A stretch of DNA of 64,000 nucleotides from Lytechinus pictus (GCF_037042905.1 NC_087262.1:16182001-16246000), one strand, 5' to 3'; positions 7,589-13,500 are shown, counted from the stretch's first letter. Translations and numbers: made by a program. Notes: generated by a model from the sequence alone, not told the origin.

Positions 7589-10500
7589 GTAAGAAACGGT
7601 TGTTGCGAGAGAACTAAAAATAAATTTTGATATCGCCATGATGATGTCTGTTGACTGTGTGTGTGGTGGGTATGGAATTGCGGAATCGCGGAATGACAAT
7701 AGTTTGCAACCACCACCCTTCTGACCCTGTCTGTGTTAAGTTTATGATGCATGCCGTTTATGCAACAATCCCACACAAACTCGACAAATGTCTTTGAAAT
7801 ATCCATTTTGTTAAAAAAATAACACAACTTAATTAAAACTTAAATAATATATGATCTGGTTTTCATGATATAATCTTGGGTCGGGATTATATTTCACCTA
7901 GATCGAGCTCCAGACATGCCAGGCAGAGCAGAGCTGAGCCTCTCTGTGAGTGTGATTGAAATTGTGTGAATAAATTTGTATTAAAATGAAACTAAAGTAA
8001 AGAAAGCCTCAATTCAATTAACAACATGAATAACGGTAATGTTGTTAGGTAGTTTTTTTCTTTTCATTTGTCAAATGACAAAAAACAAACTAATTTGACA
8101 TGTCATGGTTGAGCATAATTTATTTAATTATGATGGTGGAGGGTAAAAATGTAGCACACAAATGTTTCATTTTTTATTAGTAGATGTGTGTGTATTTGAG
8201 TTTTGTCAGACGTGTATCAATCAGATATGATTATTTACGTCTGGGACCGACCTTACGTCACCATCCGAAAGACGTGACCATGGTGACCAGGGCTCGAACC
8301 TCTGCATCAATTCGTAACTTCATTTAGTGTTTGAAATTCAATTTAATTTTTGGCCAAGACCCTGAACTTCATTTAAAGTAAGATTATCTACCCAGGCATG
8401 CCAGATGTTGTGTGTCCAGACAATCAATTTTAAATGGGCCAGTGATTTTCTGTGTTACCGGTAAATAAAACAGAAATTCTGTTTGGTTCTTATACTTTTC
8501 ATGTAAAAATTCATGGAATTCACTTTTGCAAAACTTCAGGATTTTGCTGTGTACATTTTCAGTGACAAAACAGAATTCCCATCTTTAGATCAAGTTGAAA
8601 TGGAATTACAGATTTTCAGAAACGGAAAATACCATATTTTTAAACGGAAAATCACTGTCTCTAAACTGCCATTTGGAAAAGTTGTCAATATCCACAACAG
8701 ATAAGCGCATGTGGGACTGTCGTATAATTATTGCTTTGAGCGTCGGGCCCGACGCTCTACCCGAATTCTGTGCTTATTTGCTGATTTCTCAGCAATTACA
8801 CAATTTCTTCCAGAATCCTTTGACACATGCGTTTTATTTATACAAACAGACACTTTGGTGGTCATTTCATTGGATTCTGTACGAACTCATTTTGATATCG
8901 TTACCAAAACTAGCATTTACCTTTAAAGGTCAAGTCCACCTCAGGAAAATGTTAATTTGAATCAAAAGAGAAAAATCAGACAAGCATAATGCTAAAAATT
9001 TCATCAAAATCGGATGTAAAATAAGACAGTTATGACATTTGAAAGTTCCGCTTATTTTTCACAAAATAGTCATATGCACAATTTAGTCACATGCAAATGA
9101 GATAATCGATGATGTCCCCCACTCACTATTTCTTTTATTTTTTTATTGTTTGAATTATACAATATTTCAATTTTTACAGATATGACAACACGGTCCAACT
9201 TGAATGAACCATAAAATGTTATGGTAATGGTAATTCCACATATGTTCAGGGAGAAATAAAGCTTCGTTTCGCACGACAATGAGGAGAAAATTAGAATATT
9301 TCACATTTCATATAATAAAATACAAAAGAAATAGTGAGTGATGTCATCAGTTCCCTCATTTTGCATCGACCCAAGCTTCCAGCCCCCCCCCCCCCTGGTA
9401 TCTACATGTAATGGTGCGTCCCTAGGAGTGTTTGAATTCACTTCATAGGCCAGTAACAGTTTATGTTGAATGATAATAACTCCATTTTGCTGTTTAATTT
9501 TTCCATTTTGCAGGAATTCAAAGACTTTGACAAGGAGCCCCCTTCAAATTGTTCAGCGGGTCCCGTCGGTGATGACAGTAAGTAATATATTTGATTTTTA
9601 AGGTTGGTTCAAGATGGTTTGTAGTACATGTACATTGCCACAGTTGAATTCAACATATGGTCATTCTAAAAAAAAACTTTCAGTTTATTGTATCTTCCTT
9701 AGGGCTCTAGTGTTGCATCATTGAAAGTTTCCTGTCATATATTGTCTGGACAATAAATAACATGTCCAAAGAATATATATATGTGGTACTTTGTCTTGGC
9801 TACACAAACTAGTTTATTCTAATCTACTTTATAAACTTTAATAAATAAATTACCTTGCATCAGGGTCATGGAGTCATCATCTTCCAAGAGCAGATAAAAT
9901 GTGCAGCCTCTTTTTTCATCTTTGTAGAGTAAGTGCAGATTGTGGGCTGTTTGAGAAGTCTAGTTATTAATGTGTCGGGCTACTTCTTTAGGGGATGTCT
10001 TATAGGGTTTCAACATTTTTTCATTTCTCTTTTTTTTTTAATGTTCATGTTTTAACTCCTTTTATTATGAAGGTTGGATCCTGTTAACTTTTATCCTTTT
10101 TATGCTTTATCCACACAGTGTATCACTGGCAAGCAACGATAATGGGTCCGGTAAGTATTGAAATTTCAATCCTTTGCAGTCACACGTTCAGAGGATTTTA
10201 AGAACCACCAACAATCATTGGCTTCCTTTGGCCTTTAGCGAGCCTAATATTTCATTGTGTATTTCCATCCATGATACCTTTCGTGAGACTTTACCAAAAA
10301 GTATATATCTCAAATTGTAGATAAATGACTTCTCATAAAAAACTTACTTGGGAACTTAATTGAAGCCAAATCATTTTCAACAGGGTATGTAAAAAGTCGA
10401 TATCTAGAATATAACATTTTCTTCTTTAATATCAATGATTTTTATATTTGATTTGCGATTGCGATTTGATAGGCGATTGGAAGGTTATTCATGTAACATG

Positions 10501-13500
10501 GGATTGAGAAGTCACTTTATTTGGGTAGTAATTGCAATCTGAATTCTTGGGTATAACATGGAAAGTCCCAATGAATCTTGTACATCTTTGACACTGAATC
10601 TTGTAATGATTTGCATTTTAATTGGACACTGTGCTAACCAAACTTGTGGACTTTTCAGAACACCTTTGACAAGCCCTCCATGAAAAACCATGAATGCGTC
10701 CATGTTACTCTTTCGCTCACATGTAGCACTTAAAGGACAAGTCCACCCCAACAAAAACTTATGTGAATAAAAAAGGGAAAAATCCAACAAGCATAACACT
10801 GAAAATTCCATCAAAATCGGATGTAAAATAAGAAAGTTATGTCATTTTAAATTTTGCTTAATTTCACAAAACAGTTATATGCACATCCCCGTCAGTATGC
10901 AAATGAGGGAACTGATGACATCACTCACTATTTCTTTTGTATTTTATTATATGAAATGTGAAATATTCTAATTTTCTCCTCATTGTCGTGCGAAACGAAG
11001 CTTTATTTCTCCCTGAACATATGTGGAATTACCATTACCATAACATTTTATGGTTCATTCAAGTTGGACCGTGTTGTCATATCTGTAAAAATTGAAATAT
11101 TGTATAATTCAAACAATAAAAAAATAAAAGAAATAGTGAGTGGGGGACATCATCGATTATCTCATTTGCATGTGACTAAATTGTGCATATGACTATTTTG
11201 TGAAAAATAAGCGGAACTTTCAAATGTCATAACTGTCTTATTTTACATCCGATTCAGTCAGACCGCAGGTCCCTATGCTAATGAGCAAAAAGGCCAGATT
11301 CATCCAAATCATCTCGTGGCTGAATCCTCCTCCTTGCAAAATCTCGTGATTCGTGAGATTTTCTTTCTCTAAGAATTTACCTGTTTTAACCTCAAGTTAA
11401 ATGAAATATTATTGCACCATCAGATAGAGTAAAAGTTATTCTTTCATATTGGTCATTTATTTTGTATACAATATTTTCTTAAATAAGTAAATTTCTGGCC
11501 TGAAATTGTGCCTCAAAACTGAATTTTCTTCCTCTGTTTTCTTTTGCAAATTGTGCAAAACTTTTTATTTTGAGCCTCAATGATATCTATATCACCATAA
11601 AGCTGAACTTCTGTACTTTCTCACAATGCCACTCTTGATATGCGGCACCTTTTAATCGGGTCAAGATCACACTTTTCCCACCAAGGTACAAGACGAGATT
11701 TCTGAAATGTTGTACTTGCATGAAATCCAGAGTTCTGATTGGCTGGATAAGGTTCACAGAACAACAGGCGCGGGGTATTTGAGGAGATTACCACATGGGA
11801 AGTGTGACCATCCCACGAACCCAGGCACTGGAACCGTTGGAATTTGCCATTGTGTGGTCTTTTTGACCAATCAGAGTGCAGTATACTTGTTTTCAAGCTG
11901 CTTTATGTACTTGGCAAATGAAAAGTGTGATCTTGACCCGATTAAACCAATTCTTATTTTGAAACCTATATCATTTCAAAGCATACATATTCAGCTTTAT
12001 CATGATATAAATATCATTTGGGCTCAAACAAAAATAAAGTGTGAAAATAGCAGCTTTTGTCAGGTGAAAATATTTATTTTGTAGCATATTTTAGATCAAA
12101 ATTTTAACCTATATTACAAAATCTTTGAATAAATCCAAACACATGACCTGAAAGAATGATTCTTCTTCTTTACAATGGTACCAAATTCGTGAAATTCGAT
12201 GCATAATTAGAGCAGCAATGACCGAATGAAAAGAGGTGTTTTGGTCCGCATCAAGCTCATTAAATATGCAAAACATCTCAAGTCATGAATATCACTTGGA
12301 TGAAAGAAGCCACTTTCTTGGGACCTGCAGTCTGACTGGATTTTGATGAAATTTTTAGCATTATGCTTGTCTGATTTTTCTCTTTTGATTCAAATTAACA
12401 TTTTCCTGAGGTGGACTTGACCTTTAAAGGTAAATGCTAGTTTTGCTAACGATATCAAAATGAGTTCGTACAGAATCCAATGAAATGACCACCAAAGTGT
12501 CTGTTTGTATAAATAAAACGCATGTGTCAAAGGATTCTGGAAGAAATTGTGTAATTGCTGAGAAATCAGCAAATAAGCACAGAATTCGGGTAGAGCGTCG
12601 GGCCCGACGCTCAAAGCAATAATTATACGACAGTCCCACATGCGCTTATCTGTTGGGGAAGTTCAGTCTGAACATTTTTCAGCGTAGATTTCAAGGTTTC
12701 ACAAAGTTCAGTTTATATAACTGTACCAGATCTAGATCCTCGATGATATACTGACAATTAAGCCTGGTTTTACAGACTTTCTCATGAAATCAGTGTTTAC
12801 TGCAACTACTGGAATTTCTCTTTAATTGGCCCTTTATAACATAGCTTAGTGATTGATCATGGGGCTTATTTTACATGATGCATCATACACAATAATCAAT
12901 GCAATCAATTGTCGAGATCACCCCTATCATCATCAATAGGGGTATCCATGCCTTTTACGACATGCTTTTAAATCAGTAGTCTTTATATTCATTATCATAA
13001 TTTTTTTGTTCCTGATCATTTTGTAAAACGATACGAAATGATGTTATTTTGTAAGGGCGCTAATGAATGAACATTATTATTATCATATGACTAACTATTC
13101 CTTCTCTCTCTTTTCATTTTTTCCTCTTCACAGCCCGACAGTCCATACTCAGGTGGTGTGTTTTTCCTTTCTATTCACTTTCCAACAGATTACCCCTTCA
13201 AGCCTCCAAAGGTGAGTTATAGATAATCTGACCCATCCCATTAAATATTTTAAGTTTTTCAACATATTGCAAAACATACAAACATAGAAGCAAGTTGAAT
13301 ATTGTAAGGAATATATTGATATATTTATCATGGTTCCTGTTAAGATGTTTCCAATTGATAAATGTTGGCTTATGTGTTAATAGAGGGAATATTGTACGTT
13401 AAAAAGAGCTGCACGATATTGCATATTTGTGTATTTGAGTATCGTCAGGTTTTATATCACGATATGGTGATATATCATTCATGATTAAAAAAAATCATGA

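What the first reader, a model, noticed from the sequence alone, without database searches (positions are those of the whole stretch)
8691..12659. Near-perfect inverted duplication brackets UBE2D exons 2-3 (circRNA / in-frame exon-skipping geometry)
Seen in sequence: 8691-9366 (intron 1) is a reverse-complement copy of 10897-11254 plus 12343-12659 (intron 3), with only about 3 differences. The copy spans the junction of two different MITEs and is truncated inside both, so it is not a simple transposition; local template-switch duplication or gene conversion is more likely (inference). In the pre-mRNA the arms could pair and loop out exons 2+3, which total 96 nt with phase 0 at both ends. Established: flanking reverse-complementary intronic matches promote back-splicing and exon skipping. 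Inference: possible products are a small circUBE2D and/or an in-frame 115-aa E2 that keeps Cys85.
Basis: partly seen in the sequence, partly recalled or inferred. Interest (0 to 1): 0.7.

Follow-up and report, generated by a model that had tools for sequence, protein, structure and literature searches.

The report
Young inverted duplication flanking UBE2D exons
A 0.67-kb piece of transposon-filled intron 3 of a ubiquitin-conjugating enzyme (UBE2D-type) gene was recently copied backwards into intron 1, so the two introns could zip together around exons 2-3. The copy is real in the assembly and looks like a DNA-repair accident, but nothing yet shows that it changes splicing.

Summary
Window 8691-9366 is the reverse complement of 10897-11254 plus 12343-12659, with one substitution. 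A one-base T-run difference at the inner edge is probably part of the junction, not a later mutation.

The arms bracket exons 2 (64 nt) and 3 (32 nt) of a 147-aa UBE2D-type gene. Both ends of that 96-nt block are phase 0.

The right arm lies in two complete TTAA-flanked MITEs: A (old, other copies at most 91% identical) and B (young, 97-98%). The left arm is an internal fragment that crosses the A/B boundary. It has no target-site duplication. Its inner end joins a truncated third MITE (C) through a 7-nt microhomology, TTTGCAT. This points to a microhomology-mediated templated inverted insertion, copied right to left, not to transposition.

Afterwards the right arm gained a G>C change and a 1084-bp young DNA transposon with a 4-bp duplication.

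Folding predicts a roughly 670-bp intron helix looping out exons 2-3.

The only read-laying run was swamped by repeat reads, so back-splicing, exon skipping and the junctions in other individuals remain untested. A 96-nt circle is unfavourably small.

This is a new member of a known kind, of modest interest. The scan holds unchecked notes of similar local inverted duplications elsewhere in this genome.

The parts
8691..9366 (.). Left arm in intron 1: an inverted copy of parts of MITE B (8691-8922), the shared TTAA (8923-8926) and MITE A (8927 to about 9358). The last 8 nt (9359-9366, TTTTGCAT) are the microhomology zone shared with MITE C.
10897..11254 (.). Right arm, part 1 (inside MITE A, intron 3). 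10901-11254 is 100% complementary to 9008-9361; the 10897-10900 end lies in the junction zone.
11255..12338 (+). 1084-bp young non-autonomous DNA transposon that interrupts the right arm only. It has a 19-bp TIR (CAGTCAGAC...) and a 4-bp TSD, GATT (11251-11254 and 12339-12342). At least 40 copies in the genome are 99% identical.
12343..12659 (.). Right arm, part 2 (end of MITE A, shared TTAA, first 232 bp of MITE B). It carries the single substitution, at 12446, where the right arm is derived and the left arm keeps the B-family consensus.
10730..12427 (.). Complete fold-back MITE A (610 bp without the insert), flanked by TTAA at 10730-10733 and 12424-12427. It belongs to an old family; other copies are at most 91% identical.
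   Evidence: loose ends at 10730 and 8923
12424..12825 (.). Complete MITE B (about 400 bp), flanked by TTAA on both sides. It belongs to a young family; at least 39 other copies are 96-98% identical.
   Evidence: loose end at 12825
9367..9424 (.). Terminal 58 nt of a MITE C copy containing a poly-C run. The rest of that element is missing. In five sampled intact C copies this stretch is preceded by (A)TTTGCAT or a one-base variant of it, the same heptamer that ends the copied A sequence.
8436..8663 (.). Complete MITE D, lying 27 nt upstream of the left arm. The stretch 8664-8690 falls outside every family-D match, so the outer breakpoint probably lies in non-repeat intron DNA.
7565..7588 (+). 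UBE2D-type gene, exon 1 coding part (MALKRITK), followed by a GT donor at 7589.
9514..9577 (+). Exon 2 (64 nt), 147 nt downstream of the left arm. It is the potential back-splice acceptor.
   Evidence: RNA depth
10119..10150 (+). Exon 3 (32 nt), 746 nt upstream of the right arm. It is the potential back-splice donor.
13134..13211 (+). Exon 4 (78 nt).
14623..14728 (+). Exon 5 (106 nt), carrying the HPN motif and the catalytic Cys. It aligns to residues 67-101 of UBE2D1/2/3.
15906..16045 (+). Exon 6 coding part, including the stop codon.

Best explanation
This is a real, very young, local inverted duplication made by DNA repair or replication, not by transposition.

Intron 3 of a UBE2D-type gene held an old TTAA-flanked fold-back MITE (A) with a younger TTAA-specific MITE (B) inserted in A's flanking TTAA. 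A break or stalled fork in intron 1, at or inside a MITE C copy about 90-150 nt upstream of exon 2, was repaired by copying about 670 nt from that A/B region. The template lay 1.5 kb away and was read on the opposite strand. Synthesis switched back at a 7-nt microhomology (TTTGCAT) shared by A and C. Most of C was lost in the process, so the result is a templated inverted insertion with deletion, of the MMBIR / fold-back type.

Later the donor (right) arm acquired a G>C change and a 1084-bp cut-and-paste element.

Consequence (inferred): in the pre-mRNA the arms can form a roughly 670-bp near-perfect helix that closes a 1.5-kb loop holding exon 2, intron 2 and exon 3. I expect mainly a long intronic dsRNA (an ADAR or Dicer substrate). 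I expect at most low-level by-products: a back-spliced circle of exons 2-3 (96 nt, or 637 nt with intron 2 retained) and exon 1-to-4 skipping. Normal mRNA should remain the dominant product, because all four splice sites of exons 2 and 3 look strong.

Shown: the anatomy, the direction of copying, the microhomology and the thermodynamics. Inferred: the repair mechanism and every RNA outcome.
For: The arms are identical apart from one substitution. The closest other copies in the genome are 82-88% identical for the whole unit and at most 91% for the A part, so the arms derive from each other.

The right locus has complete A and B with TTAA flanks. The left arm is truncated inside both and has no TSD, which gives the direction right to left.

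At the inner junction, five sampled intact C copies carry TTTGCAT or a one-base variant of it directly before CGACCCAAAC..., and the A sequence ends ...CTCATTTGCAT at the breakpoint. No remnant of the rest of C lies left of the arm.

At the single substitution the left arm keeps the B-family consensus base and the right arm is derived. The 1084-bp insert has its own 4-bp TSD and belongs to a family with at least 40 copies at 99%. Both changes are therefore later events on the donor.

The spacer 9425-10728 is single-copy in the assembly.

The arm duplexes have energies of -606 and -572 kcal/mol, against -162, -88 and -79 for the self-folds. The MFE of 8600-12750 pairs 665 of 671 arm nucleotides across the exons, and the insert folds on itself.

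Exons 1-4 are expressed.

Mechanistic precedents are MMBIR (PMC2621351) and templated inverted insertions at breaks (PMC11724301).
Against: No read or contig evidence was obtained across the two junctions (8690|8691 and about 9366|9367), so the structure rests on the assembly alone (one search was swamped by repeats).

The outer junction shows no clear microhomology: 0-1 nt, or 3 nt after a mismatch.

The pre-event 'empty' site could not be recovered. There is no haplotig, and the paralogues are too old to compare.

The insert carries 5 private substitutions against the majority of seven sampled family copies, while the arms differ at 1 site. If those substitutions arose in place, the insert would be older than the duplication. 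Cut-and-paste elements carry old mutations with them, so this is not decisive.

Only the 40 best of 9566 first-look candidates were scored.
Confidence: 0.68

Rival explanations
1. The inverted arms measurably redirect splicing, so the gene yields a circUBE2D (exons 2-3) and/or an in-frame 115-aa E2 lacking residues 9-40, and this product has biological effect.
For: The flanking complementary arms are long and essentially perfect and dominate the predicted fold. Back-splice and skip junctions would use canonical AG/GT sites, and skipping is in frame. 400-800 nt of perfect flanking repeats suffice for circularisation (Sry and ciRS-7 vectors, as reviewed in PMC4201285). Inverted intronic Alus are reported to shift flanked exons towards skipping (PMC2533698; title and abstract seen, rest from my own knowledge). 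Human UBE2D2 makes a circRNA from exons 2-5, 280 nt (PMC7491078). The 64+32+78+106 nt of exons 2-5 here also sum to 280.
Against: There is no junction evidence of any kind. The exons total only 96 nt, and exons of 400 nt or less circularised poorly or not at all in the ZKSCAN1 vector, where stronger pairing above a threshold did not help (PMC4201285). The splice sites of exons 2 and 3 look strong. In the one RNA run, exon 2 depth is not depressed relative to exon 4, although that animal may lack the arm. The 115-aa form would lack the end of helix 1 and strands 1-2 of the UBC fold and is unlikely to fold (own knowledge). Two other UBE2D-type genes exist.
Confidence: 0.12
2. Gene conversion. 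An older inverted B+A fragment already lay in intron 1, and recent or continuing conversion from the intron 3 copy has homogenised it, so the near-identity does not date the duplication.
For: Inverted repeats 1.5 kb apart can convert each other (own knowledge). The insert carries 5 private substitutions while the arms differ at only 1 site, which would fit arms kept alike by conversion on either side of an older insert.
Against: Identity runs to both ends of the homology. There is no lower-identity shoulder outside 8691 or 9366, and beyond them lie unrelated sequences: 27 nt of intron DNA that match no repeat family, and MITE C. The B|A adjacency is rare in the genome (4-5 loci), so an independent second copy 1.5 kb away is unlikely. 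An original local inverted duplication would still be needed.
Confidence: 0.12
3. Assembly artefact. The left arm was created by a chimeric read or a mis-join and does not exist in the animal.
For: No independent read support could be extracted. No public run held more than 36% of the region's sampled 31-mers.
Against: The left arm differs from the right by a substitution at which it keeps the family consensus, and it lacks the 1084-bp insert. It is therefore not a computational copy of the same reads. Its inner end is a clean microhomology junction with a truncated MITE whose poly-C run is native to that family. It lies mid-chromosome inside a gene, with unique sequence between the arms.
Confidence: 0.06
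4. Two independent insertions of the same composite transposon in opposite orientation.
For: A and B are abundant families, and the B|A junction recurs at a few other loci.
Against: The A part is 100% identical between the arms but at most 91% identical to any other scored copy. The left copy ends inside both elements, has no TTAA or other TSD at its ends, and has no terminal repeats.
Confidence: 0.02

Closest known systems
Reverse-complementary matches (such as inverted Alu pairs) in flanking introns that promote exon circularisation (PMC4201285; PMC8516420)
   Same: Inverted repeats built from transposon sequence lie in the two introns flanking internal exons, within 150 and 750 nt of the splice sites. 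They are young and so pair strongly. Young TE dimers are the ones linked to circRNA loci.
   Different: The pair did not arise from two TE insertions. It is a local copy of a TE-containing segment and is essentially perfect over about 670 nt, much longer and cleaner than typical Alu pairs. The enclosed exons total only 96 nt. No back-splice product has been shown.
Human circUBE2D2 (hsa_circ_0005728): exons 2-5 of UBE2D2, 280 nt (PMC7491078)
   Same: The gene family is the same. Exons 2-5 here are 64+32+78+106 nt, which sum to the 280 nt reported for the human circle of exons 2-5. A circle here would start at exon 2, as the human one does.
   Different: The human circle ends at exon 5, whereas the arms here bracket only exons 2-3. 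The animal lineage and the repeats are different, and the product here is hypothetical.
Inverted intronic Alus that turn a flanked exon alternative (Lev-Maor et al. 2008, PMC2533698)
   Same: The geometry is the same: dsRNA forms between the upstream and downstream introns and loops the exon(s) out.
   Different: Skipping was not observed here. Two exons and an intron lie in the loop.
Microhomology-mediated template switching (MMBIR/FoSTeS, PMC2621351) and fold-back templated inverted insertions at breaks (PMC11724301)
   Same: A nearby sequence is copied in inverted orientation, one junction sits in microhomology, recipient sequence is lost alongside, and there is no TSD.
   Different: The size (0.67 kb) lies between the 5-34-bp yeast fold-back insertions and the kb-to-Mb human CNVs. 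The second junction lacks clear microhomology. The mechanism is inferred from the product alone.
Abortive gap repair or filler DNA at DNA-transposon excision sites (own knowledge; not checked in the literature here)
   Same: A MITE (C) is left as a terminal stub, joined by microhomology to DNA templated from elsewhere.
   Different: There is no evidence that C was being excised. This is only a possible source of the initiating break.

Membership tests
Intronic reverse-complementary-match (RCM) circRNA locus | Complementary inverted sequences in the introns on both sides of the circularised exon(s) | tested here: met
   the 671-nt arms differ by 1 substitution, with a further 1-base T-run difference in the junction zone; the arms pair in the MFE.
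Intronic reverse-complementary-match (RCM) circRNA locus | Canonical acceptor upstream of the first enclosed exon and canonical donor downstream of the last | tested here: met
   AG at 9512-9513 before exon 2, and GT at 10151-10152 after exon 3.
Intronic reverse-complementary-match (RCM) circRNA locus | A back-splice junction observed in RNA (10150>9514), ideally RNase R-resistant | tested here: inconclusive
   the joint table was filled by repeat-derived joints and 964 joints were not shown. Even the canonical joints were not listed. The RNA run had no depth in the unique intron bins, so it probably samples mature mRNA, and it comes from a diverged animal.
Intronic reverse-complementary-match (RCM) circRNA locus | Enclosed exon length compatible with efficient circularisation | tested here: not met
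   The enclosed exons total 96 nt. ZKSCAN1 exons of 400 nt or less circularised poorly, and the smallest that worked in that study was 360 nt (PMC4201285). A 637-nt intron-retaining circle would fit.
Structure-driven exon skipping (inverted intronic repeats) | The exon 1-exon 4 junction is present, and more so in carriers of the repeat | tested here: inconclusive
   the joint was not listed, and exon 2 depth was not depressed in X21. Whether that animal carries the arm is unknown.
Microhomology-mediated templated inverted insertion (MMBIR / fold-back type) | The inserted DNA is a copy of nearby sequence in inverted orientation, with no TSD or TIR of its own | tested here: met
   it is an internal fragment of A+B lying 1.5 kb from the donor, with no duplicated flank.
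Microhomology-mediated templated inverted insertion (MMBIR / fold-back type) | Microhomology at the breakpoint junctions | tested here: met
   the inner junction has the 7-nt TTTGCAT, present in A and (exactly or with one change) in five sampled C copies; the outer junction has 0-1 nt, or 3 nt after a mismatch, so one of the two junctions is clear.
Microhomology-mediated templated inverted insertion (MMBIR / fold-back type) | Comparison with the pre-event (empty) allele | not testable with these tools
UBE2D (UbcH5) class I E2 enzymes | UBC core with the HPN motif and catalytic Cys85, about 147 aa with no extensions, and best matches to UBE2D1-3 | tested here: met
   the exon translations give a 147-aa protein; exon 5 aligns to residues 67-101 of UBE2D1/2/3 with E about 1e-18.
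Non-autonomous cut-and-paste DNA transposon (the 1084-bp insert) | Terminal inverted repeats, a target-site duplication of fixed length, and many near-identical copies | tested here: met
   19-bp TIR, with 4-bp TSDs in 8 of 8 copies (GATT, TATG, TAGG, TTAA and others); at least 40 copies at 99%.

The most novel reading that the evidence does not exclude
The arm is a segregating, very recent structural variant that acts as a natural 'circRNA cassette' in an apparent sea-urchin UBE2D paralogue. On this reading carriers make a mini-circle of exons 2-3 (or a 637-nt intron-retaining circle) and an exon 1-4 skipped mRNA. The roughly 670-bp intronic dsRNA, built from two abundant MITE families, is hyper-edited or diced into small RNAs against those families. 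That would give an allele-matched natural experiment on repeat-driven back-splicing outside mammals and insects. The 671-bp perfect inverted repeats could also flip the exon 2-3 segment by recombination, giving an inversion null allele.
Probability: 0.1. Interest if true: 0.55.

Novelty: new member of a known kind. Interest (0 to 1): 0.3.

Why it matters
If the RNA effects were real, one recent and datable mutation would link a defined DNA-repair event to a new circRNA or exon-skipping isoform in a housekeeping E2 gene. Carriers and non-carriers would serve as built-in controls.

As it stands, the locus is mainly a clean example of how a microhomology-mediated templated insertion can create long, perfect intronic inverted repeats without any new transposition. 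That source of reverse-complementary matches is rarely considered beside TE insertions.

It also flags a local hazard: perfect 0.67-kb inverted repeats around two coding exons invite inversion of that segment.

Tried and rejected
1. Read evidence. No run held more than 36% of the region's sampled words. Laying 4 runs at 90% likeness and 1% share gave tables dominated by MITE copies from elsewhere, with depths up to millions. The junctions 8690|8691 and 9366|9367, the canonical exon joints, the skip joint and the back-splice were not among the rows shown. Both tools are capped at one call, so no retry on unique sub-stretches was possible. In hindsight, laying only unique anchors (about 8664-8720, 9340-9640, 10100-10200) at 95% would have been better.

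2. A-to-I editing. A>G rows in the arms also occur in the DNA runs, so they reflect family variation. This is not assessable.

3. Empty-site search. The spacer is single-copy with no haplotig. Two other UBE2D-type loci on the same chromosome are old paralogues with different introns, and one has exons 3 and 4 fused. Neither helps.

4. Missing left part of MITE C. I searched for it upstream of the arm by BLAST and by local alignment against shuffles and found nothing above chance.

5. Dating the insert against the duplication from private substitutions. This is inconclusive, because cut-and-paste elements carry older mutations with them.

6. A Pfam scan of exon pieces failed on a frame error and was not repeated, because one search already settled the identity.

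7. I did not look up or fold the hypothetical 115-aa isoform. It is a constructed join, which the tools do not accept, and I avoided typing long sequences.

8. Independent TE insertion was considered and rejected (see rivals). Retroposition was also rejected, because there is no poly-A tract or TSD at either end of the arm.

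
Full report
OBSERVATION

The repeat finder on 7000-14000 returns two inverted pairs: 9008-9361 with 10901-11254 (354 nt, 100%) and 8691-9011 with 12339-12659 (321 nt, 99%). A global alignment shows that 8691-9366 is the reverse complement of 10897-11254 joined directly to 12343-12659. There is one substitution (8904 / 12446) and one extra T in a T-run at about 9359. In the whole 64-kb window only one other inverted pair of 150 nt or more lies within 10 kb of its partner, and it is 95% identical (47478-47965 / 48670-49157).

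THE GENE

Reading the sequence and scanning frames gives a six-coding-exon, 147-aa gene on the + strand:
- exon 1 CDS: 7565-7588
- exon 2: 9514-9577 (64 nt)
- exon 3: 10119-10150 (32 nt)
- exon 4: 13134-13211 (78 nt)
- exon 5: 14623-14728 (106 nt)
- exon 6: 15906-16045

Exon 5 aligns to residues 67-101 of UBE2D1/2/3 with E about 1e-18. Exons 2-5 here (64+32+78+106 nt) sum to 280 nt. Human circUBE2D2 is reported as exons 2-5 of UBE2D2, 280 nt (PMC7491078). At least two other UBE2D-type loci lie on the same chromosome. They are old paralogues with different introns.

WHAT THE ARMS ARE MADE OF

Searching the window's own 812-Mb genome with the left arm shows that its part 8923-9361 belongs to a very abundant family (9566 first-look candidates), whose best other copies are 90-91% identical. 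The whole unit matches only four other loci, at 82-88%. Comparing those loci with the right-arm locus after removing its insert defines two elements there:
- MITE A is a 610-bp fold-back element at 10730-12427, flanked by TTAA.
- MITE B is about 400 bp at 12424-12825, flanked by TTAA and sharing the TTAA at 12424-12427 with A.

B is an independent young family, with at least 39 other copies at 96-98%, and TTAA lies on both sides of all six sampled copies. Loose read ends with heterogeneous flanks at 8923, 10730 and 12825 mark the same family termini.

The left arm is therefore an internal fragment that crosses the A/B boundary. Because the A part is 100% identical between the arms but at most 91% identical to any other scored copy, the arms derive from each other and not from two insertions. 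One caveat applies: only the 40 best candidates were scored.

THE INSERT IN THE RIGHT ARM

11255-12338 is a 1084-bp element with 19-bp terminal inverted repeats and a 4-bp target-site duplication (GATT here). Eight of eight sampled copies show 4-bp duplications of varied sequence. At least 40 copies in the genome are 99% identical, and one lies in this window at 52883-53966. The uninterrupted left arm shows the pre-insertion state of the target.

DIRECTION AND MODE OF ORIGIN

The right locus has complete A and B elements and the left has a fragment, so copying went from right to left.

The outer end of the left arm (8691) lies 27 nt beyond a complete MITE D (8436-8663). Those 27 nt fall outside every family-D match.

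The inner end abuts the terminal 58 nt of a poly-C-containing MITE family C (9367-9424). Everything from 9425 to 10728 is single-copy in the genome. In five sampled intact C copies the sequence just before CGACCCAAAC... reads (A)TTTGCAT or a one-base variant of it. The A element at the breakpoint reads ...CTCATTTGCAT|ACTGACG. The junction therefore sits in a 7-nt microhomology. The 'extra T' is most simply the C-derived side of that overlap, which leaves a single true difference between the arms.

No remnant of the other roughly 220 bp of C lies upstream of the arm, so the event also removed recipient DNA. The arm has no TSD, no terminal repeats and no poly-A.

This product is what microhomology-mediated template switching or fold-back templated repair of a break would leave (MMBIR model, PMC2621351; templated inverted insertions, PMC11724301). 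A break made by attempted excision of C is one possible trigger, but that is speculation.

ORDER OF EVENTS

At the only substitution, all six sampled B copies and the left arm have G, while the right arm has C. Both later changes, the point mutation and the 1084-bp insertion, therefore fell on the donor.

The insert carries 5 private substitutions against the majority of seven sampled family copies. That would look older than the 1-in-671 divergence of the arms. Cut-and-paste elements carry earlier mutations with them, so this does not decide between 'insertion after duplication' and 'arms kept alike by gene conversion'.

ARTEFACT?

I could not obtain reads across the junctions. Several features argue against a mis-assembly:
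- the arm lacks the insert;
- at the variant site it keeps the family consensus base, which the right arm has lost;
- it ends in a clean microhomology junction with a truncated native MITE;
- it lies mid-chromosome with unique sequence between the arms.

I put the artefact reading at about 6%.

RNA CONSEQUENCES (INFERENCE)

Duplex energies for the two arm segments are -606 and -572 kcal/mol, against -162, -88 and -79 for the self-folds. The MFE structure of 8600-12750 pairs 665 of 671 arm nucleotides across the exons. The 1084-nt insert folds on itself with its ends paired, which gives a three-way junction and an almost continuous helix of about 670 bp. That helix closes a 1530-nt loop holding exon 2, intron 2 (541 nt) and exon 3. 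The arms lie 147 nt upstream and 746 nt downstream of the enclosed splice sites.

Flanking complementary repeats promote back-splicing (PMC4201285; PMC8516420), and inverted intronic Alus are reported to promote skipping of flanked exons (PMC2533698; I saw its title and abstract, the rest is from my own knowledge). However, in the ZKSCAN1 system exons of 400 nt or less circularised poorly, and making the repeats perfect did not raise yield (PMC4201285). The enclosed exons here total 96 nt, and their splice sites look strong (polypyrimidine tracts; GTAAGT donors).

I therefore expect mainly a long intronic dsRNA, with at most minor circular or skipped by-products. A 115-aa product lacking residues 9-40 of the UBC fold is unlikely to be a working E2 (own knowledge).

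READ DATA

The look-up of sequencing runs listed 24 runs under two coded organism labels, and none held more than 36% of the sampled words.

In read laying an organism-A contig matched 7560-8211 with 2 mismatches, so it is probably the assembly's species. An organism-B contig differed by about 3%. The raw RNA run (organism B) carried non-reference letters in all reads at six sites in the transcribed exons.

Exons 1-4 are expressed in that run. Depth at the SNP sites is about 250-270x in exon 1, about 200x in exon 2 and about 100-130x in exon 4. This gives no hint of strong skipping, but it is unknown whether that animal carries the arm.

VERDICT

The structural interpretation is supported and made more precise: a microhomology-mediated templated inverted insertion, copied right to left and followed by a TE insertion in the donor. 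The functional interpretation is physically plausible but untested, and is disfavoured as a major outcome.

This is a new member of a known kind. Earlier unchecked notes of this scan list other local inverted duplications in the same genome and call the genome a sea urchin's. I tested neither point.

Noticed in passing
window 52883-53966 (- strand): A second full-length copy of the 1084-bp TIR element, 99% identical to the one in the right arm. The family has at least 40 near-identical copies and 1937 first-look candidates in the genome, so it was probably active recently.
   Followed up: partly
window 47478-47965 and 48670-49157: Another long inverted pair (488 nt, 95% complementary) with 704 nt between the arms. 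It may be a transposon with long terminal inverted repeats or another fold-back structure.
   Followed up: no
window 12424-12427; L002/L038 (G000:C13:5378681-5379505); L004: MITE B sits in the TTAA that flanks MITE A at this locus and at a few other loci (B 96% and 80% identical there). A-element flanks therefore seem to be a recurrent TTAA target for B, or the B+A pair has been duplicated as a unit.
   Followed up: partly
G000:C18:4902482-4902586 (-) and G000:C18:16317722-16317826 (+); loci L041-L044: Two further UBE2D-type genes lie on the same chromosome, one only about 121 kb downstream of this gene. The copy at 4.9 Mb has the more canonical N-terminus, and its exons 3 and 4 appear fused.
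   Followed up: partly
window 9367-9424 and loci L022-L026: MITE family C (about 280 bp) has terminal inverted repeats containing a 10-14-nt poly-C/poly-G run, so the poly-C tract just upstream of exon 2 is native to this family and not a sequencing oddity.
   Followed up: partly
window 55016-55414 (- strand): An open segment ending ...[21 protein letters not shown] looks, from memory, like the start of an NTF2-like domain of a G3BP-type protein. It is probably an exon of a neighbouring gene.
   Followed up: no
window 7526, 7562, 9567, 13149, 13172, 13178: All reads of RNA run X21 (organism B) carry the non-reference base at these exonic sites, and an organism-B DNA contig differs by about 3% in intron 1. 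An organism-A contig matches at 99.7%. The public raw RNA data are therefore from a diverged population or sister species.
   Followed up: no
window 9178-9290 and 10970-11084: Most expressed copies of MITE A continue with a different central segment (loose-end consensus GAATTTGACGATTAGGACC..., agreement 0.9), so the A copy at this locus belongs to a minority structural variant of the family.
   Followed up: no
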